Source: Iphione sp. A-MEVVRFRX5
Lineage: Eukaryota
DNA length: 64,000 nt
NCBI GenBank assembly: GCA_976226885.1
Contig: OZ320317.1
Span: forward strand, 24,800,001 to 24,864,000
Direction: 5' to 3'
The position numbers and the translations under genes are program-made. Below the pieces are notes generated by a model. The model did no database searches. It saw nothing but the letters and a program-made list of their open reading frames with translations, and was not told the origin of the DNA. Positions 423 to 62,111 of this stretch are shown here, one piece after another (the stretch's first letter is position 1; each line of letters begins with the position of its first letter).

Positions 423-603
423 GAGTGGGCTCGGCACACCGGTAAATACAGGGAGGGCTTGGATAAGCTCGAGTGGGCCAAATGGAAGACCCGGCTTCGG
501 TGCGCCTTCAACAAAGCCCCAGATATAGAAGAGTTAAAAGATCAGTCAGAGCTGGATGGACCAAACCCCTTCAAAGTGTACATGTTCAAACCGAAGGACA
601 ACC
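423..603 (+). CDS. IRF: IRF-A exon: C-terminal half of the IRF DNA-binding domain
   Basis: AG at 421-422, donor gtaagt at 604; translation contains GKY, WKTRLRCAFNK and PFKVY motifs diagnostic of IRF DBDs. Confidence 0.95.
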
Positions 604-3600
604 GTAAGTATGAAAGCAAATGCAATTCTGACCAGTAGTTCACAGACAACACCTCTCTGTTATGTAGCCCCATAACGCCCACTCGGATTCTATGCCAAAA
701 AAAGGGGGGGTGCTACTGTTTTAATTTTGGTCATCTCTCTCAGTCATTTTCTAGCATTATTTCGTACTCTAAAGCACTGAATCTATCAGAATATGAGCGT
801 AGGGGAGCCCAACTATGGGTCAAGATCGTACTCAAGCAGCAAATCAGTTTCAAGTACGCTTATTCCATTCAAGTTAGGTTATCTGCACCGTGCATGGACT
901 ATTGAAAAATGTTTAAAGATTTCATGCTATTTTTATATTAAAGTTTGTTAAGTTACCGGTCGAGGGAGCCACGTATATTTCAACTGACAAAGAAATGTTT
1001 ATCGTCTGTGTGCCATAAAGCACAAATATTTATCCTTTTTTCGGTATATGTAATGTTCTTCCCTTCTTTACAACTTGTACAGATTTCTTTATCACCATGG
1101 AAAATAGAACAATGATTTTGCTCCTGATCATTTTGACTAGCCTGTTGATTTCTTATTTATCACTTTTTCCCAGAACCCAAGAAAGAGGAAAAAAAGACGA
1201 ATAAAGTCGTCAAAGAAAAAGAGGAGACAAAAATGGTGAGCATATCAAGATAAAACTTGCATTCTGTCTTTTTATGCATCTTTTTAACTGTGTAAAATTC
1301 CAACTTTCACCTCAATATGAATGTATGTTTTTATCCGATTTCATATGTCCTTGTTAACATACACTGTATCTAACTTGTACAGTACTTAGCAACTTACCTT
1401 GTGGGCAACTCAACTAGGAGGGGAATTCAGGATTAAGAGCAAGTTTGGTTGGTCCCCATGGTTTATTTTATATGATATGATTAATTCAGGTAAGAGGGAA
1501 ACCTGCATTTAAGGGCATCTTTGTCTGGTCCCATTAATGGTCTTGATTCTGAGTTGCTCATATAAGTAAATTCATAAATTCTTCCTCTTAGTCCCAAGAG
1601 TAAGTGAGGCTGGTCTACATAGCTTGAATTGGCAGCGCAGATGATTTTTTTCACGATCACCTTTACATACTTTACCAAGAGTAGGATGCCTCCTACCATG
1701 GCCAACCCGCACCAGCTACAGTCAGCTGTGAAGAGTCCGGAGACAGCCATTGAGTTGACGTCAAGCAAAGTAGCAGCTAGCTTGTCGAGCAGTCTCTTTT
1801 GAGAGTGGCTTGAGGGTCAAGTAGTCTCGAAGTTGTTTGAGGATGAATTGTCATAGAGTTTTCCGAAGATCAGGTCGTCTCAAAATGTGTCTGTGGCATG
1901 AATCGTCACAAAAGTTGTCATCGAGCTGCTCGAGGGTTAAGTTGTGCCAAAGTTGTCTCAGGACGAGTTTTCTCAATTCCTCTAAGGAGTGAATCATCTG
2001 AAAGTTGTCTGAAGGATCAGTTATCCGAGGGACAAGTGATCTCAAAGTTGTTTTAGGGAGGTATCATCCCAACTTTGTGAGTTGTCTCAAACCTGCATTC
2101 CTCCATGGTAAAGGTGTTTGGTGACTCGGGTCATCAGTAGTCAGGTAGATGTTTGAGTGCTATATGCTTGGGTCAGAGGTCACAGATGTCAGGCCTTCAG
2201 TGCCATGGCTCGGTTGTTGCTGGTTAAACACGAGGCCCCTCATGTCTTAATGGTCAGTAGTCATATATGACATGAGCCCTGTTATGGCATGATTCGGTTG
2301 TCGGAAGTCAAATGGAATGGTTTTAGTGCCCAGTAGTCAGAGAGATGCAAGTCACCTAGGCTCACTGATCAGTAACAAGTTGGTTATGAGGCTCCCTATA
2401 TCAGGGCTTAGTGGTCAGTAGTCTCGTTTACATGAGGCCCCCTGTGTCATGGCTGTCAGTTGTCAGTAGTCAGATAGACGTATGGCCCCCCGCCTCTATC
2501 ATGGCCCAATTTTCAGTACTCAGATGGACACGAGAACCCTTCATGGTGGTTCAGTGATGAGTAGTTGAGAGACCTGAAACCTCTGATTTCATGGCCCATT
2601 GGCCAGTAATTAGGTATATATTAAGCCACTATGTTTCCATAGTCAAATGGGTACGCAACCCTAGGTGTCTTCAGTCAGTGGCCAGTAGTGAGGTTAATAT
2701 CTGTGTCCCACTTCCAACAGCCCATGTTAAATGTACTTTGATATTCTTCCGACTCATGCTCACTTGTGTTTGCCCTCATGACAAGTGTTATCAAACTGAT
2801 GGTTGTTGTCTCTGCTGTCTTCAGACATATCAGGAGCCTTTCCTGCCTAATGTGCTGGATGAGTTCAACTTATCAAACAAAAGTAAGCTCCAGTTTACTA
2901 CCTTGTGTCACTTTGGCAGTCAGTTCTTGTTTATTACTAGAATCCCACAATGTGGGTCAGATGATGTCCACATTTGAATTTGTCATTTAAGTGTTATTTG
3001 TATTCTGTAAAATACAAGAAGGTATACTGTATAAATAATAATGACAATAATGATAATAATAATTTAGAATAATAATAATAAACACTATCAGTATCATGGA
3101 CAGTACTAAAAGCAAATGGCAAATGTGTGTTTTGAGTAGGGAGCATTCAGATCCTGCTATCCTGTGTATGAAGTGAGTAAAATGTGTTCCAGGGAGAGGG
3201 ACAGTCTTTTTGATGGCTCAGTCGGCCCCTTGCCTCATTATGTCACTGTTGGCTGTTCCTGGTGGGTCTGGTGAGCGAGTGAAAGGGATGGGCGGCCTTA
3301 GGCAGCAAAGGAGGACATCTGAAAGCCGTAGCAGCAAGGGTGGCTGTCTGAAGCTGAAGGCAGTGAGGGTGGGTGGGGGTATCATGGCCATAGGCAGTGA
3401 GAGAGGGGGAAGTGACAGTTGTAGTGAGGGAGGGAGTGCCTGTAATGAGTGAGGTAGGGTGAATGATACTCGTAGTGAGCGAGGAAAATGTGTCTGACAG
3501 CTGTACTGAGTGAGAGAGGGAAGGAAGGTGCCTGTTAGGCTGCAGTAAACATGGGAGGTTGCCAGCTGGCCATGGGCAGTGAGGGAGGGTGTCTGATGGC

Positions 3601-6600
3601 TGTAGGAGTGTAGGGGCCCAAATCTCCACATTGCAGCTTACAGCTGCGTCTCCCCCTAGCATACAGCTAAAATGTACTTTATATATATATATATATATAT
3701 ATATAATCCGTTATATCGAACAGGAAGCATTCAAATAACTAAAGGGGAGGATACAAATGATACTCCCCGTTATTGCAATACATGTAGTTGGGATTTGCGG
3801 TACTTCTCCGCGTATAGAGTAGAATGGATATACGAGGTTAGACCCTAAATTGTATTTAACCTTTGTCTTGATTTTTGGTGTTGTCAACACTGTATTACTG
3901 TATTACTGACTGGTCAATCTCTGTAACTTGTCAGTGAATAATCAGTGTTTAAAACAGGTCATTGTTTAAACTGACTGATCAGATTTTACCAGTGGAGCCT
4001 GGAGGTCAGATCATGTTCAAAGTGGTGAGGTTATAAGCCACTGAATGAAATGAGAATTTAATAGGTTGGAGGTCCTGTGGTGTTTCTGAGTTGTTCCTAA
4101 GCTGCCACATGCTAGCACCTGAGAACTCAAGATAAGAATCAGATAAGGGGAAGAGCACCAGGGCCACCTATCTTCCTCCTCCCGGCAGGACAGCAGGCTG
4201 CTCAGATGGAGGGGGCTTATGAGAGGAGAGTGCTGGGGCTATCGCCCTTCCTCCCACTGGATGACTGGCTGCTAGGAGGATGAGGATTTGTGAGGGAGAG
4301 TGCGCTGGGGCTTCCTGTCCATCTTGCCGCTGGACAGTGTGCCACTAGGAAGGAGGGGGCCCATGGGGGGAGAGCCTGGTGCCAACACCTCTACACCTCC
4401 AGGCTTGATAGCATGCCACTAGGAGGAAGGAGGCCCATGGGGGGAGAGCCTTTGCCGAGGGTTCATCAGTCAAGATGTTGGTCCGTGTGTCACTATGTAA
4501 AGCAAATGCCAATATTAGAGAAACAACAAATCGAACATTAAAAATTCAGCTTGGATAATTCTTTTCTGTTATTCATAATCAAATGAGTACAACTACCCGA
4601 TCCAACGACCAGTTCCAATGAGAACTTCTTCCCTTTCCTCCTATTACTGATTTTTGCTGTCCTGTGCTCGGTATTATTAATGGTCTTTGTTTAAGAATTT
4701 TCATACGGTACCTACATCAACTGTAAACACTATTGTTGTAGGCGTGGGTGAAAGTATACGTTATATGTGGTGGTAAAATGTCATGGATTTGATCGATTCT
4801 CACATCGATTTGAAAATTCTTCTACAGAATGCAGCAGACATGGCGGACATTTTACAATCTCTACCAAATTCTGAAACGTCAGTGCAGGGCGGTGGGTCAA
4901 ATTGTGTTTCGACCAGTGGTGAAGTCATTGTATGCACGTGTTACCTTTTTATGGGTGGTCAACTTGCCAGCATGTGCAGCTTTCCATCCATTTTCAGTCA
5001 AGATTGCCATCATCAGTATGTATGTATGTATACGTGTGTGATCTTTTGATAGGCGGTGAACTTCCCAGCATGTCCAGCCTGCCATCCGATCTTAAGAGCA
5101 TCCCAAGTCTCGACCTTGTACGTGGATCCACAGAAGAGGTGGCCATCGAGTCAACCGACTCCTTGTCCAGTCTGAAATTTGAGGCCATGGAGACCGACCA
5201 GATGCAAACAGGTGAGGACCTGACCACATGTTAGGGTGTGGCCGTCGTGGGGATGGCATGGAAGTGGAGTGAGAATCAAAGCTCGACGAGACAGGCTAAT
5301 TGAACATCACAGTACAATCAACGTCTATTAACTGGATGGTTTTTTTAGTTGCCGAAATTATTGCCTGGTTGTCCAGTTGTTGTCTTTATCTCTTTATTTA
5401 TATATATATTTCTTTTCTTTTTGTTCTAAAATCTGTCCAGTTGAAAAGGGGGGTGGGGGTTAATGAGGCCCGACTGCATTCACCAGTTTTCTTTTCACCC
5501 TTTACACTGCTGTATTGGAGGAGGGATGTTGTGAGGGGAGGAACGGGTACAGCAGGGGGAAAGGGATACTGAGAGGGATAGGCGTAGGATAGCCAAATTA
5601 GCGAGTACTCACACGTAGTTATCACTGAAGTCTTCTCGTGAAAAGCGCCAAGTAATCCAGTAACAAGCCGCAAGACCTCCAGAATGACAGGGATGTCAGC
5701 CTTCAACCTTTTCTGTTCGATTTGGTTTGATTTTGGCCCGACGTTTACATCATTTTCCTCTGTTGAAAGGTCATTCCCCCTCCAGTGGGTGACTAGAAGT
5801 ACTTAAGTCAGTGTAGGATAAAGGAAAGTCCTTAAGTGAGGACTCAAACGGAATATACCTTAGTGAGACACATGAAGATGGAAAAATACTCTGAAGGGTT
5901 GGAGCACACCAAGTCAAATTTTCAAAGTATCCGGTCAGCAGGCAGCTGTAGTGGTCCTTCTCAGTTGGGGGCCCCTCTCCCCCATATCCGTGTAGGGCTC
6001 AGTTGGGATGTGGGTGAGGGGGGCATAGCAGTCTGACTTGGCCGTGCCCCCTCCCTCGTAGTGGTGTGGTATTTCAGTCCGCAGGGTAATGGGTGGCCAT
6101 AGAGTTCCTTCTGAGCCTGGTCCCTTTCCCCTCCCTGTTAAGTGGAGTGTCTTTGGATTTGTATACCGTATGTGTATGTTTATGTGTGTTCTATGGACAT
6201 CATTAATTTTGTATATTATTTGCATAAAAACACACGCTTGCAGGCTTTACTGTCAGCAGCAGCCCACGGACAAACTCAAGCAGGTACCACAGATTTATAA
6301 AGTGAGACATCACAATCCCACCTATTTCAGGAGCCCCCCACTCCATTCTATCCAAGAAAGCAACTTACAAGACAGGATATGAAAATTAATAAAGATAATA
6401 TTGAGATCACGGTTAGGTAGTTCAAGACAATTGACTTCAGAAAACCAATGAATATATTTATTTGGCCCTGTCGGGTTTGCCGTTATGTCTGCTTTTAAAG
6501 GCACTGCAGGAGGCCTTCAGAATTTATCCTTCTCATTCTCTTAATCGGACCCTATTTAGATTTCCACAAGATTTCTGCTTTATCAACCCACTCCGCAGTA

Positions 6601-9600
6601 CAAGCCTTAAGAGTCTTATTGCAAGCAGTACGACTAGCCCGTTCAAACTGCCCTTTCACAGCATTCAACTAGAAAGATCCACCCTGCTACAAGCATTGGG
6701 TGCTTCTGAGCAAGAATTAACAGCTAAAGGCACCTGGGTGACTACTTCATCATTAACCTATACAGGTTACAGTCCAAGGTCTTGTAGGACAGCGAAGTGT
6801 TTTTTTTTCAAATCTCTAAACCCTTCAAGTTGGGCTGTGGCTATATGATGATTAGCATTGTTAATAATTAGCCTGTTAATTTCACTAATATTTCTGCTGC
6901 TAGTCTCCCCACACTGTATTCCTCCAGCTCCGGCTGAAAACCAGCCATTAGGCTGATGCTGGTCTGCTGTTTTAAAGAAATAAAAAAAATTAGCACATCA
7001 CATGTTAGACTCTCCAGTTATCTTTATGCATTGGTAGGCGGGGTCCCCGAGTTGATCGTCTGAAGTACGATAATATAGAATTACGGGCATTTAAAATCTT
7101 GTCTCTGGGGTAATAAGTCAATATTGCTCTTAACTGTGAGTTACCTTGCCACCTGAGTTGGTAATATTATAGAAAATAAACCATTAAGGCCATCCAACCT
7201 TGTAATTAATTCCGAGTTGCACTTCTAATCGCGTAGGCTATAAGGTGGATTTATAGATTGGTTCCATTCAGAGTGGAACTTGGATATTAGGGCATTGGCT
7301 GAGTGAACGTTAGTGTACATTATTTGGTTGATGATAACTCCATGGACTTCCTATTATTTTAAATTATTGTTTCCAGATTTCTCTTCTGTGATTTCTTGCA
7401 GAAACTGTCATAACAGACCCAGGGACCTATCCCACCCCGAGAACCCGAGGAATACCTGGGCTGTCCCCATCCTCATCACCCCTCCACGGTGCCACTGCCA
7501 TCACTCATGTGCTCTTCGACCAGGAAGCTGCATACAGAGAGGAGGCCCGAGGATTCGCGGTCTCCCCATCACACTCGGAGTCCTCCAGCTCCTCCCAACA
7601 GACAGCCTCCACGGTGGCAGATGGCTTCTTGCCGTATGCCAATATGGGGTCACCTCTACAGAATGCCACCATAGGTGCCCCACAAGTCACGCCAGGGGAG
7701 CCGGCTTACACTGCCAATCTAGGGGAGGCTGACGGAGAGAGCATCGAGCTTCTACCGATGCCCCTCGGTGGCACCGTGGAAGTGCACGAACTGCCCTCTC
7801 ATGTGGTGATGAGACCAGGGACCATCACCCTCAGGCTCGTGCAGGACGGTGACACCGAGTCTCCACATGTACTCATTAATGACGAGGATATGGACATCTC
7901 CGAAGACCGAGCCACCATCCGTTAGTTCTTACCTTCATTCTTTCATTTACATGTACACCCTAGACGAGTGTAGGAGACCAAGCTTGGGCCAGGCCAGTTT
8001 TTTGTCTCTCCCACAGTTCTGCCTCATTAGACAACATATATAGTGTGTAGAATGAGTGATTCGTTGGTAGAAATCTTGGCCCATGTTCAAGTTTGGTCTC
8101 TCCCGTGATCTGGTCTCTACTGTAATTCTTCATCTGTGGTTTTCGATCATGTACGGTCAGACCCTTCTACTTCAAAGACTCCCAACTTCAAACTACGCAC
8201 TACTTTGAACACATCAAGTCACATTACTTTTACTATTTCCATTGTATAATGACTCAGTACTTCCGACGATTCAATTGGTGGTACAAAACGTTGGCATGCT
8301 TAGATATGGGAAGCAGAGGGGTCTTACTGTGCATGTATTGCCTGCAGAGCGAGGAGAACAGGCAAAATGATAAGCCCCAGTTTCCATGTACACATATTTC
8401 CTGCTGTATATTTGCTGTCACAGAATCCATATTCACTATATTCCATGTATTGGGACACCCCAAAACATGTTACATGGTTTAGAAATTCTATGATGTGACT
8501 TCGGAAAATGTGCTCTTAATGGAAATTGAGTCCATGTACATTACACTACATTTGGTCATTTTTGCATCCCGTACGTTTTACCCTCAATGTAGCTAGGTAT
8601 TTCCTCAACTGCTTGATTTGATTACTCGAATGAGGCCTGCTTTAACGTATACATATGTATTTAGCCGAGCAATTTCCAAACATGATTGTTGCTATCCTTC
8701 AAAGGGTCGTTCTTTACAATCTGTGTATGTAATTTTAAAGGGCTAAAACTCTCCTTCAGAGGAGGTACAAAATCCCTACAAGTTCCAGTCTGCTTGTATA
8801 CGTAGTCAAGCAAAAGATAGAGCTTTATCTGATGATGACGACAGATAATAACATAGTTGGAACAAGCTCTTGGGAATTATTTCATATGTATACGATTGAC
8901 ATTGCGTAGGCTTTCTCCTAGAAATTAGTAGAATTTCCACCAGATGGAAAGGGCCTATTGTGTTTGTATACATGTACATTAAAAGCTAACTTCGAGGGTC
9001 ATATGAGCAGGCTCATGTAGTGCAATTCCAGCCCAAGAGATGGCACCACCCGCAGTCTACATGACCCTGCCGTGAGCTTTTCGCAAAGGTTGAAATATGA
9101 CAGCTATAATACTGGCCTGGTTCTTGTGGGTTCCTTTCATCTAAGGGGACTTGTCCACGTTGCCTGCAGTTGTCTAGAAATGAGCAGTACATCCCGTTTT
9201 CTTGGTCGAGTTGGGTCGCAACGACACCCCGCTCCGTTTGTGGAACTCCCGTACTTGGAACGTCAATAACACAGATGTAACTGATTTTGAAATGCTTTAT
9301 ATCTCAGCACCTGTTGTGTCACTATCATGGCTTCCTAAGTCCCGAAAACACTACACGTTCCCCTTTTGTAACTTTTGTAGAGAACCGATTGAATGTGCGC
9401 GTGTATTATATGCAAAACGTCGTGCTGGAAGAGTGGACATGGAATGCGCAAGGTTTCCGTTTATATTACGGTTCGGACGCCGACATCCGCTTAATGAGCA
9501 ACACCGAGCAGGCAAGACAGGTGAAACTGATTAAATGATTTGTAATGTTTTTATTCAGGATGATAATTTATTCTTGTAATAATTTGTATTTTCTCATTAG

Positions 9601-12600
9601 ATGTCAGGAGGAAAACAGCAGGGGTACCTTTGTAAGGCTAAGTATTTTGGTACTACTTCTGTATGCAAAGATTATCTTATTTGGGTTTTTTTCTGCTTTT
9701 ATTTTTTGGACAATTAGTCAACTCAACCATCGTTTGTCTAATGACCGAGGATACGTCCCATTGCCACATTGTATGTTTATGTCTAGTGAAAAAGACTAAT
9801 AGCCAACATACCTTTTTTATGTAAAGGGTTTCTGGCTAGAAGTTTTTTTTGTATTGTATGTTTATGTATATCACATCAATCACATAGAAACAGTTGAAGG
9901 AAAAGTATTTTCCTTCATTCCAATACTAGCTTTAGTTTGAGACCTTGGTAAGATCGTGCTTGTCCAAAGCCTTTGTGGAAATAGTATTCAAATGCTGATA
10001 AAGAAAACGTTGTGTGTAGTATATTTCATTCGGATAGAACCGATTTGTTGAGCAGGAAAGAATAATAAATTCGGACTCAACATGCTTATCAGTTCGAATT
10101 GTTCTCCTCTGTACCATCAAATGTCATCATGCAGACACCCCACGGTCCTGACTCTAATTAACCTGGCTAAAGTAGTTGTCTAACTTCTTGTTTTGTAGAA
10201 GCTTGGGCCTGCCGATGCCCACCAGCTGCACTTGCCACCATGCAACGGACTTGTTGGTGCACCTGAGCATGAGGAGTATACTAAGATACTTCTCGAAAAC
10301 TTAATGCGAGGAATTTATATTGAATGTGAGGAAGGCAACATCTATGCGACTCGGCTTTGCAGGTACATGCGGTAGTTGACCTTGACATTTAGAAACTCTA
10401 GATGCATTAAGCATCAAAATGAATACATAACGTCGGTGTACTCAAACCTTTTCATCCAGAAACTCAGAATATAAATCTATTCCGTATTTTTAGATGACTT
10501 CTCAAGATTTTAGGGGTGATAATGTAAAACGACAGTTTGATAAATTTGTTCTTATCTAGTCAGATCAGGAACCTGCGTGTAGTTTTTTGTTCACCTTGTC
10601 AAGAACTCGTATTTTAACTAGTGCCCCATCATACAAGTCATAAACCATAAATGTTAGGTATATTCATGTCCGTTATTCAAGTAATGAATAGCGTATGCAT
10701 CTAGCGTGTGTGATTCTAAGAAAAGTCTCCTGTTAAAATTTCATCATCATCTCCTCAGGTGCGTAGTGTACTACTGCAGCTCCAGTCAGCAAAATGGGAT
10801 CAAGCTGAACCGGTCCATGAGGACCAAGATTTTTGACATGGCGGGCTTCGTTCGCGCCTACCAGACGTATAAGAGAGGCCAGGGCAGTAAGCCCAGTCCA
10901 GAGGTGGCGCTCGGCTTCGGCAACCCCATCAGCTACGTCCCAGTGAAGGAGAAACTGCTCATCTCAGCCTACGTCCTCAGTATGCAGGCACACAAGCTGC
11001 TATCCGAGGTGCGCTAAGTTTTCTGTTATTGCTATTGTTGTTGTTGTTGTTGCTGTCGTTGTTGTCTTTGGTTCGACAGGTTTTCATTAGCCCAGTCGAC
11101 TTTCATTGACACAGCATGGCCGAGGGGTCCCATGAAGTATAGAACTATAAAAATTGGAACAATAATTTTAAAAAGAAGTATAGATTTTCCTGGCTCAAAA
11201 AGGAACAAATAAGAACATCAAGAGACTTAACTAAAAGCAGCCCTCTTCAGTGGTAATGGTGTAATGCTAACAGTAACGGTATCGCTATTGCTGTTCATGA
11301 GATTTCTACTATGCAATTGTATAGGGTTTCCCTCGCTTGATATTTCTATTAGGGATAACAATTTCAGTAGTAAAACACTTGTCTAATGCAGCTTAAACTT
11401 AGCTTAATACTTAGATATGTACCATTCGAGCGAATCTGTAATAATAGTAGATTTCAGCAGCTATGGCCTGTAATATGATGTATCTTTATCTAGTGTAACT
11501 ATTTTGTAATGCTTTTTAAACTAGGATTACACTGCTATGACCTTTAGTCTGATTTACCTTTGTAAACTGGGAATTTAACCAAAGTAAACTTAGATGAAAG
11601 GTATTGTAATTTTTACAGACTATTCCTAGATCTTCTATAGAATAAGAGTATTAAAAACCAAGCAACCATATTCTTGGCAGACCATAGTTTAGACATGGTC
11701 AGAATTACGGACTCTTTACAGAGGAACGAATTTTGTTATACCCGGTAATAATGGTTGGTCACAATACGAACACAACCTGAATTAAGAGTTTCATTCAGAA
11801 CCTTATGGTGTATTGTAGCGTTCAACTACGTGCTGAACATATTTATAATTGAATATATATATATATATGACAGACTCAGTAATCCTTAAGGAATCGGTCA
11901 TTTGAAAGCAAATTTCTTAACTGTTGGAGACGAACGTGTTTGTCATGAATGCTGGAATGTCGTAAAAACCAACTAAATATATAGCTCACATCTACATTAA
12001 CTTTATGGCAGGACTTACATGGATTTTAACAATGTTTAACAGAGCCCTGTTCCATAAAGAAACATGTTTCATTAATATAAAAAGTTTACACGGTGTTTAC
12101 TATTGATGTCATTTGGAATTTTCATTACAATATATTCATAATCATATTCTAGACATACAGCTATAATGTTTTAAAGGAAAGGTGTTTCAAAGATATGTAC
12201 ATAACGATTTTTTAAAAAAAGAAACATGTATACAGAATACTTTCTACTATACAGCCGACCCTCATTGGTTTGAACATACAGACATGAAATTCTATTGTGA
12301 GAGTAGCCAAAGTAAGGTTATGGCACTAGATGCTATACACAATATGAATTCTATAGATAAGTTCTAATGTTGTGTGATTTTGACGGATTTTTTAAAAGGG
12401 ACGGGTACTTGAAGGCCTAGCGGCATGAAAGTATGGGACGAGGTCAACTGTATAGGAAAAAAGAAATTGTTAATGCTTGAGAGTAAAAATAAGTTTGCTT
12501 GATATAAATAAATACTTGTAAAACAATCATTTTATGAGACATTTTGTCTTCTTTGTGCTCTATCACCAGAATGCAGTTGTCTGCCAGGACATTAACTTGG

Positions 12601-15823: not shown

Positions 15824-16119
15824 ATGGCCTGAGGTCACTGCTCGTGTTTTCACAGGAGGATCCTGTTTTCTCCCTTTTGTGTCTTGAACAAATACAAATA
15901 TGCATATAGACCTCGTAATGAATCGCCCTCATTTAAAAAAAGAACCTCATAATGGTGTTGGTAAAATCCCCATGGCCTGAGGTCACTGCTCGTGTTTTCA
16001 CAGGAGGATCCTGTTTTCTCCCTTTTGTGTCTTGAACAAATACAAATATGCATATAGACCTCGTAATGAATCGCCCTCATTTAAAAAAAGAACCTCATAA
16101 TGGTGTTGGTAAAATCCCC
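15824..16119. repeat. Two identical tandem copies of a 148-bp unit
   Basis: atggcctgaggtcactgctcg...ggtaaaatcccc at 15824-15971 and 15972-16119. Confidence 0.9.
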
Positions 16120-19689: not shown

Positions 19690-19911
19690 GAGCTGGTCAG
19701 CCAGTCCAGCAGCTATCTTCTGGCTGCAGGATGGGAGGGTGCTTCTGGCCCAAGCTTAGCTGGTCCAGCAGCTGTCATCCAGCTGGAGGGTGGCTGGCAG
19801 GGTGGGAAGGTGCTGGCTCTGTCCAGCTGCTATCCCCCTGCTGATAGGCAGGGTGCAGGGTGGGAGGGTGTTGTTGACCCAAGCTAAGCTGGTCCAGCAG
19901 CTATCCCCCAG
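19690..19911. repeat. GC-rich minisatellite running into an assembly gap
   Basis: Recurring agctggtccagcagct and gggtgggagggtg units directly before the N-run at 19912. Confidence 0.6.
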
Positions 19912-25900: not shown

Positions 25901-27936
25901 CTATATACATTCAGAACTCAGGATCGAAACATGTGATTTCTCAACCATACAGNNNNNNNNNNNNNNNNNNNNNNNNNNNNNNNNNNNNNNNNNNNNNNNN
26001 NNNNNNNNNNNNNNNNNNNNNNNNNNNNNNNNNNNNNNNNNNNNNNNNNNNNNNNNNNNNNNNNNNNNNNNNNNNNNNNNNNNNNNNNNNNNNNNNNNNN
26101 NNNNNNNNNNNNNNNNNNNNNNNNNNNNNNNNNNNNNNNNNNNNNNNNNNNNNNNNNNNNNNNNNNNNNNNNAGTGTTTTTGTACATACATTTTTGTACA
26201 TGGATTTTCAGTTTACCCACTTTTCCCCACCAGTTATGTACATTTACGCACAAATACATCCTTTTCCAGACTTTCTCCGGTCATTTTTGGAGGTTTTGTC
26301 CTTCTGCCCTTTTTTCATCCTTTTCCTCACCATTTTTGCCGGCCTTTGCGGTATTGTCTGTCTTCATCCTTTTCTTTGTCATTTTTGCTGATTTTTGCAG
26401 TATTTATTGTCAAGTTCATCCTTTTTCATGCTTTTCCTCATCATATTCACCAGATTCACACAGCCTAAATGTAAGACCAAAGGACAGCCCTCTCCATTGA
26501 GCTGCGTGAATACAAAAATGCATACCAACACACATGGAGGTCTAATGCAGCCTATTGCAGACAAACATGGTTAAGAAAACCAGGCCTGAGTGTGCATGTT
26601 ACACGACACAGTCAATAAAGTCTGGAGTGAACCATGTTCATTGATGCACATACAGTCGCCTTCGCCTAAAGCGACCACCTAAGGGACTGAACAAAAGTGG
26701 TCGCCTTGGTCGCCTAAGCTATTGGCTACTCCTCCTACTTAATTTGATTTGTTCTTTGAAAAATTGGTTGCACTGGCCGACTGGTCACCCTGGCCGACAA
26801 GTCGCAGGGTGAGAGTCTACTGTATTTGTATTCGTGTTGTACATAACATAAGAAGTCATCCACACAGAGATCTGAGGAAAATCAAAGTCACAGAAAACAA
26901 GGAAAGACATATAGAATACGTGGTTAGTCCACGCGAATTCTGGGTGTAAAAAGAAACAAGAAAAAGAGAACACAGGAAAAGACGATGAAGAAAGCTCAAC
27001 ATCCTTATGAGCTAAATATGGACGTTCAGGAAAGAATGGCCACTCTTATAAAATGCGTGTCTGCTGATCTATAGGCATCGCATTTATAGAGTGGAGTATA
27101 AGCCGACTTGCATGGCTAGAAAAGAGTGGGTAAAAAAGTGCAAATTTTTTTGATAAAAGATTGTTAGCTTCATCACTTCATTCACAATATTTCATCATCN
27201 NNNNNNNNNNNNNNNNNNNNNNNNNNNNNNNNNNNNNNNNNNNNNNNNNNNNNNNNNNNNNNNNNNNNNNNNNNNNNNNNNNNNNNNNNNNNNNNNNNNN
27301 NNNNNNNNNNNNNNNNNNNNNNNNNNNNNNNNNNNNTTTTCATCATCGTCAATCGTCATCATCAAATAGGAAACAACAGGGCAACGTGGTAACACAAAGC
27401 TTATTACATAGATTATGTACTACCATTGGACCTATGGGATAAATGGCCCGGACTTTCACTGCAACTGATGAATAAATAAAAGAAAGTGTTAAAAAGCATT
27501 AATCCAGAACAAAATACGTGTACAAACAGTTTGTTGTATGCCTCATTCTTTAAGTGGTACAGTCAGGGTTTTCTTCTCACAAACTAACCTTTCTCATAAG
27601 TCAGGCTGAATTACAGTGTATATCATCCTCTATATATCGGGCACATTGCCGAACAACTCAGCATGTATCAAAAGACAGCAATTAATAACTTACATCTATT
27701 ACAACCCTGATTCCACATTTCTATCAAAGCATGCTTTGTGAAAAAACAGTTTTACAAAAATCACAACGGTGATGGGTGGGAGCTCATGCTGAAGCCATTC
27801 CAATCAAAAGACCCGACAGAACAAAAATATAATATAATAATTACATGGGTTCTTCTTGTATTTATATATATATATACAAATATATATCTACGAGTATCAA
27901 ATACATTGTGGCAGAAAACATCCTTTCACACAGAAA

Positions 27937-30900
27937 TCAAGATTTCTGATCCAAAAGCCCTTTTATGTCTTGGTAGAGGTCGGTACTGATTACTCTGGCT
28001 AAGGTTAAGAAACTTTGCAGAACCTCGGGGTCAATGTTGTACGGTCTTCGTTCACTGCAGCTGGCACCCCTGCTGCTTTCTCCATTGCAATTCAAAACAT
28101 TCCCCGGCAGTGTCTTCGTGCTTTTTTTATCTCCTGCTGCCCCAGCAGGGGTTATGGCCACGTAACTGCCACTTGGTTTGGAACATGAAAGGTCCATGGG
28201 ACTTTCTTGGTCAGACTTGCTGATTTTCTCACTTCTGATAAAGGAGGCCGTATACATCTGTACTGCACTTGCTTCTTTCAAGCCGCTTGTGTCACTGCTG
28301 CTCACTCGGTTACAGGAGCCTGCGTTCTCTGTTACATCTTCGCTGCTACTGCCATCATTACTGTCGACTGAACTGTGACTGTCCATACTGTCGTGGCTGT
28401 CTGCATCCTTGGTGTCAGCATCCACTGTCCGTGGTATGATGGTAGCCCGTATGTCAGCCTCCGGTTTCTGAAAAATGAATTCACTTCGTTGGTCACTCCA
28501 TTGTTAGAATATTTCTTTCCATACTTCATGAACACTGATTAGGAGTTAGCAGTGGTAAGATACGGAACAAAGAAATCAGTCTTCCAAAGAATTTTACATT
28601 CCCCTTAAACTTTGCTATGGAAGTAGTGTTGCCTATTAGCTTCAAGTGGTTACAATGGAGAGGTGGTAATTATGACCCTTCCCCCCATCATCACCCCCAC
28701 CACTCCCTCAAGCACTTTTGTACTGTGAACTTCCATCCGAGGGGTAGAAAATCAAACATCGCTCACGACCTTTCCTCACAGATAAGTTTCATGAGAACCA
28801 AATGTTTGTGACCCGTCAACGAATAGAAATCTAGCATAATCTCGCTAATCTGTGCTGCCCAGTCTGTTTATAGATTTGCCATCAATCACACTAGATGATT
28901 CTCGTCATGCATGGTAAACTTTGGATGAAATATGCATTATGGCCGACTTGACAGGCCTGAGAAACAAACCTTAGTCATGTTTTCAAGTGCTGCCTTTCGG
29001 TTGCGTTCTGCCTTAACATGCTTGGCAACATCTGGAACAGGAACGAACCATTAAAACATTGGTTACGAGTTTTCTGATTTATTAGACAAATTAATGTTAA
29101 AAAATGACGGAAAATATTTTCATACAGTCGGATCTTGTTATCTACAGAGGTTCTGAAACATTCACTAAACAGATTCACTTATATTACAGGGTCTCTTCTC
29201 TGTGTATTTTTAGTATAAGCTTATTTAGGAATCTGGAGAATTCAGTTCCTGGAGGATATAGAATGTACATGACATGATCGGTAAAAATAACTTCCTCCCA
29301 ATATATATGAGGACTGGTAGTTCTTATATATATTTTCTTCTCATTTCATCAATATTCTTCTCACAAATGTGTACTCGCTACATTCGTATTTAATGAAATT
29401 CAATTTACAGGATGGATATTGGATTGGATGCAGTCCATTTATCCATAAATGATCAAAGTTCTTCACAGGAGTTATGCTAGTACCTTCTTAATCTACAAAA
29501 CGTTCTAAAGGTCACGAGTTCAGAACACTGACATCCAAAAATCCGCATTTGGCAGAACTAGAGAAGCACAGAGTATGTATGTTATTTCGAGCTATACATT
29601 TGGGTTTTTTTTTATATCTGTCGAACAAGGTGGGTGTTGCTGTACAATACCCATGTACAGTTGAGTCTACTCTATTTACGACCACCACTTGGGACCAAGC
29701 CCAAAAGGTCATAATGGCAAATTTGGTTGTAAATAGAGTATCAAATGTATGGAAATTGAGATTTTTGTTCCCAACTAAAGTGGTCTTAAATAGAGAATGG
29801 TTGCAAAATGATGTGGTCGTAAATAGAGACTCCACTGTATATAAATGTCTTAAAAGAAGGATTCCTGTAAAGAGGCGATGGCAGAAAAAGGATTGAGTTC
29901 ATCTTTTTATAACTTGCCTTGATGAAATACTCTCATACACATGTATAGATGTAAAATTATACACACCTTTTCCATTAGTTTTAAACATATAAACTTTATA
30001 GGGATTATCACCCTCCAGATCTGAAAGATCCTTCAGTTCTGTGATGTCAGGGGACTTGTTGAAGGCACACCGAAGACGCACTTTCCACTTCGCCCATTCT
30101 GTCTTATCCAGACCCTGGCGATACTTCCCTGTATGTTGGGCCCACTCCTGTGAAAATGGAAAGAAAACTTACTGCAATGAATATCAATATAGGGTAAAAA
30201 AATGCAATACAGATAATGATCACTTTAACATGGACGGGAAATAAATCCTGACAGAACAAAGCCCTACATTTCTGTGTGCATGCATACAGGCAAAGTTTCC
30301 TATCTCAATGATCTGCTTAACACAACTGTCCAAGGAAAATGAGAAAATTCAGATGGTCACATTTGTATTCTCTGGTTCAAGGAATTAACTTATCACAAAG
30401 CAGCTTCAGTTGTGTTTGCACAACTGACCAGAGCAGACCTGTTTTAACAGTTCTATTCCAGCAGGCTAAACCTGGTCAACCAGATACCCAGACAAGTGAA
30501 CTCGAATTCCAAGTTGAAAAATACAGGGAAAGCTGAGCATTTTAAATTTTCAGCTAAGCTATTTCCGTTGACCTATGCACAACTGGTATCACAAGCCAAG
30601 CAAGGCCAGTGCTGAAACCTCCAGCCTCTAAGCAATCACTTCACACCTCCAGCCTCAGGTAGCAAATTTGCCTTTATGACCAACTTAACAGCTTGACCCA
30701 GATAATTTTTACCCACAGCTTCACAGAAATGTATTCTCTTAGTTGTTTTCTTTCTCCTCGCCTCTTTTCTTACTATTTTTTCACCCCAACAGGAAAGAAA
30801 ACCTGTCTTTTACAATCCTATCTACACAGTCCACCCTGACCCATGAGGCAGTAAGGTTTGTTTTAAAGAGACAAACATTTATCATAGTTTTTCATTTTGT

Positions 30901-33900
30901 AACACCCAAAAGCCAATCCATGCCAACATGACCTAGCCTAACAGCAAAGTCTCAGCTTAATCAACTGATAATGAAGTATAACTGATCATGTCCTGATGAA
31001 GGCTTAATTAAGGGACCAAACCGTTGAGACATGTATCTTATGACACCACTAATAAACACTAATTCACCATCATGGGGGTCACCTGGTTTTGTTTGTCCTA
31101 CAATTAGGACTCTGATACAACTTATTTTGTTTCACTAAAATCTATATTTTCAGCCCCCCACCCTTCAATTAGGCCCAAATTTGCACATCTTAGAGAGGAT
31201 TTATTTGTTCTAAAGAGATAAACACTCCCCCCCCCCAAATGCCCTCCTTTTCTGCTTTACTGCCAGTACAGACTGACCTATGAACACCGATTTGATCCAT
31301 ACTCCCCACTAAACAGGACCAACCGACAGATACACCCTTCATCCCCTCCGAACTTAACAGAGAAGCAAAGACACAACCTCAGGAGACAATGACATCATCT
31401 ACTCCATGTTGCAAGAATCACCAAAATGATTCCATAAACCCATACGTGTATATAAATATATCCCTTAATAAAACTCTTCTGCAATCGGGTCATTCTTTAT
31501 TAAGGTAAGTCCTACAAGTGAAGGTACTGGAGACCTTCCATTTTACTGTGTATGAACACTCATGTCATACTACTGGTAGTGCTGCATGAGTGAGTGCACT
31601 GTTCTCGACTCCCTGACCACAGCAAAAGGGAAACTTAAGACTCCACAAAAATCCATGGCATGAATTACATATGTAAACAAATGTACACCAACATATACAG
31701 TTTTATAGATTTTGGCAAAACAAAGAAATGAAAACAGAGCACTGTTTAGAATTTGTAGTAGTTCCTAATAAAAGAGAATAAATGTAGTCATGTAGAGTCA
31801 GCCCCACTAAGCCAAGAAAATGGATTGTTTCATTAGAAAGAGTGCATGTGAGAGAGAGTTCAGCTATCATAAACATTAAATACAGTAAAAACCTTCATAT
31901 TTCCCCCAAGGTGTGCGGTTCTGCAGGGAATCCACAAGTGTGAATTTGAGGGGGTTCACTGTATTTTACCTGTCACTAACCTAGTTTCACTCAAGATTGG
32001 ACAAGAACGGACTCACTGCCAACTGGGGTGGGAGTGGGGGGTTCTGTACTAACCATAAATATCTGTGAATGTTGTGGAGACCAGTCCTGCTTTCCACCAT
32101 GCTTCCATGGAATGCGAAAGATGGATTTCTCTTTGTTCATCCATTGAAGTCCTGGGATATCACCACTGTCAATCTTGGATATCAGCCATGGCCTCAAACG
32201 CCTGCGATTCTCACCTCCTGGCTGAACACGTGTTGTCTAGGAAGAAAGACAGGTAACAGAAACAGTACTATTATAAGTTTAGGACAAAAATCTCTTTCCC
32301 TTTCTATACTTAAGTCCCATGATTTCACAACTGTCAATCTTGGAGATCGGGCACAGCTTCAGATGCCAGTAAATCTCACCTCCTGACTGAAATGAATTCT
32401 ATGGATAAAGGTTAACAAGAACTTTGGTCTGAGTTTTATGTGTATCAAAGTGCTTTTCTTTTGCCTCTCAACTTCAGCTCCAGTATGTCAATACTATCGA
32501 TCTCGGAGATGAGCCATAACTTCAAACATCTACTCATTTCCAGACCAAACACAGATTGTTAAGATTAAGAGTGCCAGGTAGGCTACAGCCATTGTCATAA
32601 TAATTTAAAAATTTGTTGTTTATCTATTTAAGTCCAAGGATGTCAACACTGTCACTGTGGAGATCATCCATTGCTTCAAGCATCTGTGATTCATACCATC
32701 TGACTGAACACCAGTGGTTCATGGAACAACACAGAGGTAACATAAACATGAATATAGCTTTGATTTATAACATGCATAGAGCAAAAGTGTATCTGTACAA
32801 TGCTTATAGACTATCATGGAATTTTTTTGAGATTGTATTGTTTACTCAGGTTAAAAGGAGTGACTGGGGCTATTATCTGACCAAGCCAGCATAAAGGGGA
32901 TTACTTTTCTCCTGGCTGTCTAAATTCTTTTTCTGGTGTTTTGAGGATTTTCACAAATTCTAAGTTTTTTTCCCTTTAGGGATTTTTAGGGGACGATCTT
33001 CTACTTTTCTTGTGCTGTGATTATCCTGTGTACAACAATAAAATAATGCTATGAAGTCAACCCCAAAATTTACTTACAAAGATCCAAATAAAAAATGCAC
33101 CTATGGACATAGCTTATTTGAAAGTATTGCTTATTTAAGATTATCAAATTCTGAACTTCAAATTGTTTTTAAATGTTGAACTTCGAGCACTTCCCAGTGC
33201 CTAGCCTCCCACATGAATACAGATGCTCTAAACAAACAATATATGCTCTAAACAAACAATGTATGTTTCTCTCTCTATATATATAAATATAGTTTCGCAC
33301 ACCAGTGCAGTCAATTATTCCCAACTTACAGACTCTGGTGTTGACAGTGTGAAGGTTTGTGTGACTGATGGTTCTGGCTGTCTCTCCTCTGGAGGAGATG
33401 AATCACTGGAGGTGTCCGGCTCCTCCTTCACACACGGCAGGTTATCTAAGCTCACTGTGATGGGGATGGCGAGAGGTGCCTTGTTGAGCTGGGGAGTCTG
33501 AATTGTCTTGGTGACCGGAGCTACTGTTTGGGTGAGGAGGGACTGGACACTGGTGCCAGTCTTGTTTGATTTTAATGATACCGGCACGAGGCAGATGTCT
33601 GTACGAGGTGAGCCCGTAGCCTTAATGTTCTTCTCCAAGGAGGCAGGTTTTTCCTCCAGGGCAACTACTGATACCTTTTTCTCCATCTTAGAGTCTTTTG
33701 GTATACTTTTAATGACGTAAACCACATCTTGGACAGGCACCTGCATGGCCAGCCTATCTGACATGGTGGAGCCTGGTTTAGAGTCTTGTGAAGAATCACA
33801 AGCAAGTGTATAACTCACTGAGGAGGGCATAATCTTGACCCTTTTCAGAGCAGGAGGGGAGTCCCCCTCTGAAATTTTCTTCACAGCCTTCACTTCCATG

Positions 33901-33938
33901 CTTCCCAGCACTTTGGAGTCACTGCTCGATCTAATCAT
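27937..33938 (-). CDS. IRF: Interferon regulatory factor B: N-terminal extension + IRF DBD + low-complexity C-terminus without IAD, ~521 aa, 5 coding exons
   Basis: Exons on minus: 33938-33330 (ATG, 203 codons, donor gtaagt), 32236-32054 (RRRLRPWLISKIDSGDIPGLQWMNKEKSIFRIPWKHGGKQDW), 30147-29967 (EWAQHTGKYRQGLDKTEWAKWKVRLRCAFNKSPDITEL...PYKVYMF), 29031-28970, 28467-27937 (TGA). Phases 0/0/1/0 chain; the 181-nt and 62-nt exons match IRF-A exon sizes and phases exactly. Confidence 0.88.
29658..29837. mobile_element. Tc1/mariner (pogo/Tigger-like) MITE
   Basis: TIRs cagttgagtct(a)ctctatttacgaccac / cagtggagtctctatttacgaccac, flanked by TA on both sides. Confidence 0.75.
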
Positions 33939-36262: not shown

Positions 36263-36879
36263 GAAAACTGAAAGACGAACAGAACTGCCAAGAGTTTTCC
36301 CAAGGAAAATGGGGTTTGAAACTGAAACCGCACGGTGCCACTAACGAAATTCCCAGTGGATACTCTATATAAGATGCACATACCATGAAAATGAATTAAT
36401 CCATGTCTTATGTCTGGTCCCTTCACGCAGAAAACCTCCAAAGAACTACTGTTCAAGCGTCTCTCCACTAACAGCGTGTTTGAAGTCAGGACTGATATGG
36501 ATCAGGAAGATTCCGACTCCGAAAACGAAAGTGAAACTAACTGGATATGACTTCGGCACACACCTTGATCAGTACGGAATTATTCTACCTTACATGCGCA
36601 GATAATACGTCTTTACTTGTTTCACGACGTGTTCATATAAAACGTGAACATTTGTTCCGCAACCTTTTTTTTCCCGGTCAGTTAGCATTGTTGGCGCCGG
36701 TGGTGTCAGGTCGATCAGGTGGTAATTTTGTGTAAAATTGAAAAAAAAAACACGGATCATTGAATCTAGGATGGTCGCATATCGCAGAAATTTCTGTAAA
36801 AATTAGCAGAACAATCGCGAGAAACAGTACGATATGTTGTATGAGTGCGACCGATACACAAGATGGTTGGAAAATTCCC
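36263..36879. promoter_or_regulatory. Cluster of ISRE/IRF-E and kB-like motifs in the putative first intron of IRF-B
   Basis: GAAAACTGAAAG 36263-36274, GAAACTGAAACC 36318-36329, GAAAACGAAAGTGAAACT 36521-36538; kB-like CGAAATTCCC 36345-36354 and GGAAAATTCCC 36869-36879. Confidence 0.55.
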
Positions 36880-37170
36880 ATTGTCACTATGGCCTCCTCG
36901 AGCGATTGGGGTTTCGAACCCAGCCCAGCGGCGGTGATATGTTTTTACACATCAAACATACTTGTCTTCTAAAATGTAAATAAAATTCGAATTTACCTGC
37001 CCCGTCTAACTTGTATTTAAAGTACTTTATGGGCCAAAAGTATTGAAAAACTTGCATGTCCACTCATCCGACCGACCGTACTTCGTAAACTTTAATAACA
37101 AGATTTTAGTTCGGAAGGTACCCGATGACCTAGAAGGCCCTAACAACCACATCGTACCATTTATACTCAC

Positions 37171-37700
37171 CACAAAACAACTTTCCAGTGAGAAGTAGAC
37201 TCCATTTACTGTATAAATATCCAGGAAATCCGATGAGGAGTACGAATTTAGGTGGACTACATAACATCGGAACCTTCGGAGCCTTATTTTCCTTCCTCTA
37301 TCATCGCTCACGACAGATGGCAGAAGGAACTGATTGGCGCAGTGGCTTAGTACCTCTCACTTCCGGGTGTTGGCGCAAGCGGTCGACGAGAGCTATGCGT
37401 ACTAAACAGGAAAAAAATAAATATAAAAGACCATACAAAACAGGAATAAAGTGACGGTGACACACGCGCGATGATCTCATTTGTAAGACGATGTAAGATT
37501 GTCGTTTAATGAATATGCACATGTTTGTAACGAGTTGAGACCCTGTCAACTAGGTAGCCGCACCGGTACGGCGGTGGTTAAATCGTCGACGAGAAAATAA
37601 ATCCAGGTAGCCTATACTGTTCCCTTGACAACACTGATTTGTCCACCTGCGTTCAACCTTCACTCCGTCATAGGGGATCGGTCCTGAAATGCTGCCTTTC
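37171..37700 (-). promoter_or_regulatory. CpG-rich putative promoter / non-coding first exon of IRF-B (possibly bidirectional)
   Basis: Local CpG enrichment, ETS/GABP-type CCGGAAGTG (plus cacttccgg 37358-37366), CCAAT box near 37333, strong minus-strand donor GTGAGT at 37170; an acceptor at 34166-34167 opens the ATG-containing exon. Confidence 0.45.
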
Positions 37701-62108: not shown

Positions 62109-62111
62109 TAA

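What the first reader, a model, noticed from the sequence alone, without database searches (positions are those of the whole stretch)
423..37330. Tail-to-tail IRF paralog pair that looks like an activator plus inducible repressor circuit
Seen: two convergent IRF genes share exon sizes and phases (181 nt, 62 nt) and 45/60 identical residues in the second DBD exon, including the unusual EWAKWK and CAFNK variants. IRF-A keeps a full IAD. IRF-B ends without one, carries PMDLS, and has ISRE/kB motifs in its putative first intron. Known: IRF DBDs bind GAAANNGAAA, IAD1 mediates activation and dimerisation, and vertebrate IRF1 induces the antagonist IRF2. Inference: a lineage-specific inverted duplication independently produced a negative-feedback pair in an animal without interferon, with B competing for the same sites and recruiting co-repressors.
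Basis: partly seen in the sequence, partly recalled or inferred. Interest (0 to 1): 0.8.

Follow-up and report, generated by a model that had tools for sequence, protein, structure and literature searches.

The report
Old IRF paralog pair, one IAD-less
Two real interferon-regulatory-factor genes lie tail-to-tail in an invertebrate genome. One is a standard type, and its old sister copy has lost the partner-binding domain and gained long disordered ends, but nothing yet shows that they form an activator-repressor feedback loop.

Summary
The observation largely holds. IRF-A (+, from 423; its 5' end is off the window) and IRF-B (-) are both real IRF genes. Their second DBD exons are both 181 nt, in the same phases, and 45/60 residues are identical. 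IRF-A has a complete IAD. IRF-B has none in the sequenced DNA and carries PMDLS. An ISRE-like cluster lies upstream of IRF-B.

Corrections:
- IRF-B has a missed 609-nt coding exon (33938-33330). This gives a 521-aa protein with an internal DBD and a roughly 203-aa disordered N-terminal extension.
- The ISRE cluster may therefore be promoter rather than first intron.
- CAFNK is typical of the clade, not unusual. The intron position and phases are also found in Lingula, so they are family features.
- No strict kB site lies in the cluster.
- IRF-A needs an extra 58-nt exon to stay in frame after its 62-nt exon.

Evolution: A and B are sisters in the DBD tree (100/99). A B+IRF1 clade is rejected (p=0.0002). 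Synonymous sites are saturated, so the duplication is lineage-specific but old.

The repressor/feedback reading is untested. No RNA runs were listed, and an IAD-less oyster IRF activates ISRE reporters. The tail-to-tail adjacency spans four unverified assembly gaps.

The parts
423..603 (+). IRF-A DBD exon 2 (181 nt, phase 0 to 1). DBD exon 1 lies off the window.
   Evidence: AG/GTAAGT borders. Pfam IRF E 3e-16.
1174..1235 (+). IRF-A 62-nt basic exon (QPKKEEKKTNKVVKEKEETKM)
   Evidence: Strong polypyrimidine-AG acceptor and GTGAGC donor. Coding LLR +3.8. In frame only together with the 58-nt exon.
2825..2882 (+). IRF-A 58-nt exon (TYQEPFLPNVLDEFNLSNK), newly proposed
   Evidence: Restores the frame, since 62+58=120. 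AG/GTAAGC borders. Its LPxxLD/E motif aligns with relatives P0200-P0204 and P0203.
5053..5211 (+). IRF-A exon carrying the conserved LPSDLK motif
   Evidence: tblastn with Arenicola P0197 and P0119. Frame-consistent model.
7402..7920 (+). IRF-A linker exon (Ser/Pro-rich, acidic)
   Evidence: Open frame with AG/GTTAGT borders. Coding signature.
9381..9520 (+). IRF-A IAD exon 1
   Evidence: Pfam IRF-3 positions 3-37. tblastn with P0119 E 1e-4.
10199..10362 (+). IRF-A IAD exon 2
   Evidence: Pfam IRF-3 positions 41-92, E 2e-8.
10759..11017 (+). IRF-A IAD exon 3 with TAA stop at 11015-11017
   Evidence: Pfam IRF-3 positions 90-179, E 3e-12. Model.
33330..33938 (-). IRF-B first coding exon: about 203-aa disordered N-terminal extension (ATG at 33938, alternative ATG at 33899)
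   Evidence: 228-codon ORF ending in TCT|GTAAGT in phase 0, matching the phase-0 acceptor at 32236. Codon-position asymmetry and codon LLR exceed 2000/2000 background segments. AF2 mean pLDDT 35. No RNA evidence.
32054..32236 (-). IRF-B DBD exon 1 (183 nt). It has no ATG, and an in-frame TAG lies directly upstream.
   Evidence: Pfam IRF E 5e-18.
29967..30147 (-). IRF-B DBD exon 2 (181 nt)
   Evidence: Pfam IRF E 8e-16. Recognition helix RLRCAFNKS aligns with IRF4 RLRCALNKS.
28970..29031 (-). IRF-B 62-nt basic exon (DVAKHVKAERNRKAALENMTK)
   Evidence: Needed to join phase 1 to the phase-0 last exon. Good splice signals. Coding LLR +3.6.
27937..28467 (-). IRF-B terminal coding exon: 176 aa plus TGA. 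Acidic, Ser-rich and disordered, with no IAD.
   Evidence: No Pfam match. AF2 is disordered except for a terminal helix. pI 4.7.
28186..28200 (-). PMDLS (CtBP-type PxDLS motif, in the context SPMDLSCSKPS)
   Evidence: Atlas feature neighbours include E1A and NRIP1 (a lead only).
27943..28029 (-). Predicted C-terminal amphipathic helix of IRF-B
   Evidence: AF2 helix at residues 147-175 of the exon, pLDDT about 80.
36318..36536 (.). ISRE-like cluster 2.4-2.6 kb upstream of IRF-B's ATG: GAAACTGAAA at 36318-36327 and GAAAACGAAAGTGAAA at 36521-36536
   Evidence: On the gene's strand, a TATATAG (36371-36365) and a GTAAGT donor (36191-36186) lie nearby. Whether this is promoter or intron is unresolved.
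32320..32718 (-). Three decayed tandem copies of the 5' part of DBD exon 1, within the intron
   Evidence: tblastn E 4e-4 and 2e-3, plus a DNA alignment.

Best explanation
This is an old, lineage-specific pair of IRF paralogs in a lophotrochozoan. The nearest named relatives are annelids.

IRF-A is the canonical IRF4/8-like gene. It has the DBD, a basic linker, the LPSDLK motif and a complete IAD.

IRF-B descends from the same IAD-bearing ancestor. It kept the first three shared exons: DBD 183 and 181 nt, then a 62-nt basic exon. Its DBD is intact, selectively constrained and of the IRF4 type. It replaced everything downstream with a 176-aa acidic, disordered tail carrying one PMDLS motif and a terminal helix. 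It also carries a roughly 203-aa disordered N-terminal extension.

Shown: the gene structures, the domain content, the sister relationship and purifying selection on B's DBD.

Inferred: B binds the same GAAA-core sites as A. It cannot make IAD-mediated contacts, so it acts as an IAD-independent modulator of A's targets. The most likely mode is a competitive antagonist, possibly recruiting CtBP. Its own transcription may respond to IRFs through the upstream ISRE-like cluster.
For: - Pfam IRF on both genes, and IRF-3 (IAD) on A only.
- Uninterrupted 521-aa spliced model for B and 513-aa partial model for A.
- Coding signature of the N-terminal exon.
- A+B are sisters at 100/99. A B+IRF1 clade is rejected at p=0.0002.
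- dN is 0.17 with saturated dS, which means long purifying selection on both DBDs.
- The recognition helix is identical in A and B and matches IRF4's except L to F.
- B's tails are disordered apart from one helix.
- PMDLS is present in B and absent from A. Atlas neighbours of the tail are CtBP-binding proteins.
- Significant ISRE-like cluster upstream.
Against: - There is no transcript evidence. No RNA run was listed. The N-terminal exon junction, the 62-nt exons and B's 3' end are therefore predictions.
- No AATAAA or ATTAAA lies between B's stop codon and the gap at 27336.
- One PxDLS motif is weak evidence. By my estimate the chance of one in 521 aa is about 0.1.
- B's acidic Ser/Asp-rich regions would suit an activator equally well. 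Oyster IAD-less CgIRF2 activates ISRE and IFN-beta reporters (PMC5557890).
- No invertebrate IRF1/2-like sequences were in the tree.
- A contributes only 60 residues to the tree.
- Adjacency and orientation cross four unverified gaps.
Confidence: 0.4

Rival explanations
1. IRF-B is an IRF1-like stand-alone activator. After losing the IAD it acquired acidic, Ser/Asp-rich activation regions. It works in parallel with IRF-A or amplifies it, as positive rather than negative feedback.
For: - The tail has pI 4.2-4.7 with 27 D/E and 43 S/T in 176 aa. The N-terminal exon contains an acidic stretch, EEPDTSSDSSPPEERQPEPS.
- Vertebrate IRF1 lacks an IAD1 and is an activator (established knowledge).
- Oyster IAD-less CgIRF2 is virus- and poly(I:C)-induced and activates ISRE and IFN-beta reporters (PMC5557890).
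Against: - The PMDLS motif, and Atlas neighbours that are co-repressor-binding proteins.
- No recognisable activation-domain family was found. Nothing was tested.
Confidence: 0.3
2. IRF-B still has an IAD. The IAD exons would be hidden in the N gaps or further downstream, and would be reached by an internal donor in what looks like the terminal exon.
For: - Four gaps of only estimated length lie downstream of B, at 19912-27336.
- No canonical poly(A) signal lies between the stop codon and the first gap.
Against: - In A, the IAD needs about 560 nt in three exons spread over 1.6 kb.
- tblastn with A's IAD and 13 relatives finds nothing on the - strand between 11 and 28 kb.
- The 176-aa exon has a full coding signature up to its TGA.
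Confidence: 0.05
3. The 609-nt ORF at 33938-33330 belongs to a separate gene or is an unrelated exon. IRF-B would then start with a short unseen exon, giving an ordinary N-terminal DBD.
For: - No RNA evidence.
- No homologue of the ORF was found.
- Most IRFs have an N-terminal DBD.
Against: - Same strand, 1.1 kb upstream, a consensus GTAAGT donor exactly at the ORF's end, and a phase-0 match to the acceptor.
- Strong coding signature.
- DBD exon 1 lacks an ATG and is preceded by an in-frame stop.
- Arenicola IRF P0197 has a 150-aa N-terminal extension.
- Another N-extended, IAD-less IRF is noted in this genome (s1-327849, untested).
Confidence: 0.1
4. The similarity and pairing are artefacts. 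Either gene conversion homogenised exon 2, or a scaffolding error placed two unlinked IRF genes tail-to-tail.
For: - Only exon 2 of A is available for the tree.
- Four gaps separate the genes. One gap abuts a 129-nt repeat.
Against: - Third codon positions are at chance-level identity: 22/60 against 0.24 expected. Third-position composition differs between the copies. Recent conversion is therefore excluded.
- Scaffold orientation could not be tested.
Confidence: 0.08

Closest known systems
Lophotrochozoan IRF4/IRF8-like genes (Haliotis, Patella, Liolophura and Lingula IRF8-like; Arenicola marina IRF-like protein; unnamed Logan/ENA proteins P0200-P0204)
   Same: IRF-A has the same architecture: DBD, basic stretch, LPxxLE and LPSDLK motifs, and an IAD. 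DBD identity is 60-69%. The intron position and phases match Lingula.
   Different: IRF-A is 5'-truncated by the window edge. IRF-B shares only the DBD with this group and lacks the LPSDLK motif and the IAD.
Vertebrate IRF1/IRF2 pair (activator plus antagonist, both without IAD1)
   Same: Two paralogs with near-identical recognition helices, one proposed to antagonise the other. IRF-B, like IRF1/2, has no IAD1.
   Different: In this pair the proposed activator keeps an IAD1. B's DBD is not of the IRF1 type (AU p=0.0002). B has an internal DBD with a long N-terminal extension. No functional data exist.
Oyster CgIRF2 / CgIRF8 (PMC5557890)
   Same: A lophotrochozoan with one IAD-less and one IAD-bearing IRF, both immune-inducible and active on ISRE reporters.
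   Different: CgIRF2 is described as IRF2-like and is an activator in reporter assays. IRF-B derives from the IRF4/8-like lineage and carries a PxDLS motif.
PxDLS-containing CtBP-recruiting repressors (adenovirus E1A C-terminus, NRIP1/RIP140, ZNF238)
   Same: IRF-B's tail has PMDLS in a disordered acidic context. These families are its nearest Atlas feature neighbours. From memory, E1A's PLDLSCKRPR resembles SPMDLSCSKPS.
   Different: There is no sequence homology, only one motif, and binding is untested.

Membership tests
IRF family | IRF tryptophan-pentad DNA-binding domain (Pfam PF00605) | tested here: met
   Pfam E 3e-16 for A exon 2, and 5e-18 and 8e-16 for B exons 1 and 2. All five Trp are present in B: PWL, QWM, PWKH, EWA, KWK. 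Only the last two can be seen in A.
IRF family | Recognition helix residues that read GAAA (R-C-x-x-N-K/S) | tested here: met
   RLRCAFNK in both genes. It aligns with IRF4 RLRCALNK in solved IRF4 structures.
IAD1-bearing IRFs (IRF3-9 type, 'IRF4 supergroup') | C-terminal IRF association domain (Pfam PF10401) | tested here: met
   IRF-A: profile positions 3-179 of 180 over three exons. Local HMM E 1e-49.
IAD1-bearing IRFs (IRF3-9 type, 'IRF4 supergroup') | IAD in IRF-B | tested here: not met
   No Pfam, local HMM or tblastn signal. The tail is predicted disordered. Exons hidden in gaps cannot be fully excluded.
IAD1-bearing IRFs (IRF3-9 type, 'IRF4 supergroup') | DBD groups with IAD-bearing IRFs in phylogeny | tested here: met
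   Both A and B sit inside the lophotrochozoan IAD-bearing clade and are sisters at 100/99.
IRF1/IRF2 group | DBD groups with IRF1/2 | tested here: not met
   The AU test rejects B plus vertebrate IRF1 (lnL difference 39, p=0.0002). No IRF2 or invertebrate IRF1/2-like sequences were available.
CtBP-dependent repressors | PxDLS motif in an accessible region | tested here: met
   PMDLS at residue 435 of the model, in a region with pLDDT below 50. I estimate the chance of one such motif in 521 aa at about 0.1.
CtBP-dependent repressors | Binding to CtBP and motif-dependent repression | not testable with these tools
   Needs co-IP and reporter assays.
IRF-inducible (ISRE-driven) genes | ISRE elements in the promoter or an enhancer | tested here: met
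   Three GAAANNGAAA matches in 220 bp against 3.8 expected per 64 kb, plus an exact triple-GAAA element. Their position relative to the TSS is unknown.
IRF-inducible (ISRE-driven) genes | Induction by immune stimuli or IRF-A | not testable with these tools
   No RNA run was listed.
NF-kB target | Consensus kB site GGGRNWYYCC in the cluster | tested here: not met
   None in 35.8-37.4 kb. Window-wide there are 6 matches against 6.4 expected. Near-matches only, at 36354 and 36879.

The most novel reading that the evidence does not exclude
A lophotrochozoan independently re-invented an IRF2-like antagonist from an IRF4/8-type, IAD-bearing ancestor. On this reading, IRF-B is an ISRE-inducible, CtBP-recruiting competitor of its neighbour IRF-A, closing a negative feedback loop in an animal without interferon. 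IRF-B would also belong to a small family of N-extended, IAD-less IRFs in this genome.
Probability: 0.2. Interest if true: 0.65.

Novelty: new variant of a known kind. Interest (0 to 1): 0.4.

Why it matters
If IRF-B works as proposed, the activator/antagonist logic of vertebrate IRF1/IRF2 arose more than once, from different IRF lineages and before or without interferon. That would give a compact, testable two-gene module for invertebrate antiviral regulation.

Even without that, the locus documents a clear case of IAD loss with tail replacement and N-terminal extension in an IRF4/8-type gene. As it stands it is a well-supported annotation plus an untested hypothesis.

Tried and rejected
- RNA evidence: the look-up of sequencing runs (kind rna, B's last exon plus 3' flank) listed nothing.
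- The word search with B's terminal exon found nothing. Its length window of 103-329 aa would miss a 521-aa protein.
- phmmer and blastp of B's N- and C-terminal regions and A's linker against all 325 fetched proteins found no hits, apart from A's LPSDLK exon.
- The search of earlier findings by sequence came back blank, which is uninformative.
- The window's own proteins did not appear in either big word search. Absence of B orthologues therefore says little.
- My first IRF-A model (181+62 nt joined directly to 5053) was out of frame. It was resolved by the 58-nt exon.
- ARAGORN found no tRNA, despite tRNA-like box sequences near 36.9 and 37.35 kb. The upstream region has no repeat copy within the window.
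- TRF found no tandem arrays around the gaps.
- Nehyba et al. 2009 (PMC2767096) is not held. Statements about IRF supergroups rest on my own knowledge.
- Single-sequence AF2 of the two tails gave only low-confidence models, so no fold search was run.
- Taxon identification was not achieved. The 'annelid-like' placement rests on weakly supported grouping with Arenicola and Capitella.
Full report
**What is in the sequence**

A six-frame scan finds EWAKWK and CAFNK once on each strand. On the + strand an exon of exactly 181 nt (423-603...acag|GAGTGG...AACC|gtaagt) encodes the second half of an IRF DNA-binding domain. On the - strand an exon of exactly 181 nt (30147-29967) encodes the same segment. 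The two peptides share 45/60 residues and 124/181 nt. Both match Pfam IRF.

IRF-B's first DBD exon is 32236-32054 (183 nt, phase 0/0; Pfam IRF E 5e-18). IRF-A's first DBD exon lies left of the window.

**IRF-A model**

Homology to relatives and splice-site and frame bookkeeping give these exons:
- 423-603
- 1174-1235 (62 nt)
- 2825-2882 (58 nt)
- 5053-5211
- 7402-7920
- 9381-9520
- 10199-10362
- 10759-11017 (TAA)

This is an uninterrupted 513-residue partial protein.

The 62-nt exon alone breaks the frame. The 58-nt exon restores it. That exon encodes ...EPFLPNVLDEF..., which aligns with the LPxxLE/D motif of the nearest relatives.

The IAD is complete. Pfam IRF-3 positions 3-37, 41-92 and 90-179 fall in three consecutive exons. 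A local IAD HMM gives E 1e-49.

**IRF-B model**

DBD exon 1 has no ATG, and a TAG sits directly upstream in frame. A coding exon must therefore lie upstream.

About 1.1 kb upstream on the same strand is a 228-codon ORF. It ends precisely in TCT|GTAAGT in phase 0, matching the phase-0 acceptor. Its codon-position asymmetry (chi-square 34.6 against a background mean of 6.8) and its codon log-likelihood exceed all 2000 background segments, and only in that frame.

Splicing 33938-33330, 32236-32054, 30147-29967, 29031-28970 and 28467-27937 gives an uninterrupted 521-aa protein. Its parts are:
- a roughly 203-aa N-terminal extension
- an internal DBD
- a 21-aa basic exon
- a 176-aa tail ending in TGA

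Single-sequence AF2 predicts both the extension and the tail as disordered, except for a C-terminal helix with pLDDT about 80. The tail is acidic (pI 4.7) and rich in Ser and Asp. It carries one PxDLS-type motif, PMDLS; IRF-A has none.

No IAD is detectable in B. None is detectable anywhere on the - strand between the two genes either.

**Assembly gaps**

All four gaps in the finding's range lie between A's stop codon (11017) and B's stop codon (27937). No exon, intron or reading frame of either model crosses a gap.

Two caveats remain:
- The tail-to-tail adjacency and orientation depend on scaffolding that I could not check. No run was listed. One gap abuts a 129-nt repeat.
- No canonical poly(A) signal lies in the 600 nt between B's stop codon and the nearest gap.

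**Relatives and phylogeny**

A profile of the two exon-2 peptides was searched against 1.84 billion representatives. This returned 770 IRFs.

The best full-length matches for both A and B are lophotrochozoan IAD-bearing 'IRF8/IRF4-like' proteins. The nearest are unnamed transcriptome or metagenome proteins (P0200-P0204), Arenicola marina and Capitella. The host is therefore probably an annelid or an allied lophotrochozoan, but this was not settled.

A and B are more alike (75%) than either is to any database protein (at most 69% and 64%).

In a careful ML tree of 82 DBDs, A and B are sisters with UFBoot 100 / SH-aLRT 99. The AU test rejects a clade of B with vertebrate IRF1 (p=0.0002).

Limits of the tree:
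- A contributes only 60 residues.
- No IRF2 or invertebrate IRF1/2-like sequence was among the fetched proteins.

The duplication is old. NG86 gives dN 0.17, and dS cannot be computed because it is saturated. Third positions are 22/60 identical against 0.24 expected by composition, and third-position composition differs between the copies. This also excludes recent gene conversion. It shows long purifying selection on both DBDs, so B is not a decaying copy. Outside the DBD nothing aligns between A and B.

**What the shared features mean**

The intron after ...IF(K/M)|(E/N)WA and the 0-to-1 phases are also found in both Lingula IRF genes. There the exon is 178 nt. Exon size and phase are therefore family traits, not evidence for this particular duplication.

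CAFNK is the clade's normal recognition helix. It is IRF4's CALNK with an L-to-F change. EWAKWK is private to the pair.

**Regulatory motifs**

GAAANNGAAA occurs 13 times in the window against 3.8 expected. Three of these fall within 220 bp at 36318-36536, including an exact GAAAACGAAAGTGAAA.

On IRF-B's strand this cluster brackets a TATATAG. It precedes a GTAAGT donor at 36191. It could therefore be promoter plus a non-coding first exon, rather than a first intron. Without RNA this is open.

No strict kB consensus lies there, and kB sites are not enriched in the window.

**Function**

Established IRF biology, together with the conserved helix, makes it likely that A and B read the same GAAA-core sites. 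B cannot use IAD-mediated contacts.

The case for repression:
- The PMDLS motif. By my estimate, one such match in 521 aa has about a 10% chance.
- Atlas feature neighbours of the tail that are CtBP-binding proteins: E1A, NRIP1 and ZNF238 (a lead only).

The case against assuming repression:
- Acidic Ser/Asp-rich tails are typical activation regions.
- Vertebrate IRF1 is an IAD1-less activator.
- In the oyster, the IAD-less CgIRF2 is virus- and poly(I:C)-induced and activates ISRE and IFN-beta reporters (PMC5557890).

I therefore give the antagonist reading about 0.4 and the activator reading about 0.3. The full inducible CtBP feedback circuit gets about 0.2.

**Verdict**

The evolutionary part of the interpretation, a lineage-specific duplicate that lost its IAD, is supported, with the qualification that the duplication is ancient. 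The circuit is an untested hypothesis built on an incomplete gene model.

In kind, this is a new variant of something known. IAD-less IRFs, lineage-specific IRF duplications and paralog antagonism are all established. The IRF4/8-type origin, the internal DBD and the replaced tail are the unusual parts.

IRF-B may therefore belong to a small family.

Noticed in passing
window 32320-32718 (-): Three decayed tandem copies of the 5' part of IRF-B's DBD exon 1 lie in the intron just upstream of the real exon. The peptide remnants read GLEMSRCLKLWLISEIDSIDILEL and TTGVQSDGMNHRCLKQWMIS.
   Followed up: partly
window 15824-16119: A perfect 148-nt tandem duplication (100% identity), lying between the two genes. 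It may be real or an assembly artefact.
   Followed up: no
window 19722-19911: A repeat unit of about 129 nt runs into the assembly gap at 19912-20067. The gap probably sits in a repeat array.
   Followed up: no
window 44616-46511 (+): Intronless 632-codon ORF with a sub-threshold Pfam Ion_trans match (E 7e-5). It may be a cation-channel-like gene or a retrogene.
   Followed up: no
window 59920-64000 (-): LTR-retroelement remnant. It has integrase domains (Integrase_H2C2, rve) at 62790-64000. These are followed by two long ORFs without a Pfam match, at 61248-62111 and 59920-60867. It is cut by the window end.
   Followed up: no
window 33856-33867: A palindromic kB-like GGGGGACTCCCC lies inside IRF-B's N-terminal coding exon. 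It accounts for three of the window's six strict kB consensus matches (overlapping, on both strands).
   Followed up: no
L001 (Lingula anatina LFEI02000726.1): Two IAD-bearing IRF genes sit head-to-head about 3.8 kb apart. Their DBD exon 2 is 178 nt, with the same intron position and phases as here. Neighbouring IRF duplicates recur in lophotrochozoans.
   Followed up: partly
window 423-602 vs 29968-30147: Third-codon composition differs strongly between the paralogous exons. A is G/C-rich (40/60), while B is T-rich (20 T).
   Followed up: no
window 36900-36925 and 37330-37400: tRNA-like box sequences (GGTTCGAAACCC; TGGCGCAGTGGCTTAG on the + strand) suggest a SINE-like element upstream of the ISRE cluster. 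ARAGORN calls no tRNA, and no second copy exists in the window.
   Followed up: partly
L002 (ENA ERZ25069859 contig): A 605-aa IRF with DBD and IAD is encoded without introns on a 396-kb contig, unlike the multi-exon genes here and in Lingula.
   Followed up: no
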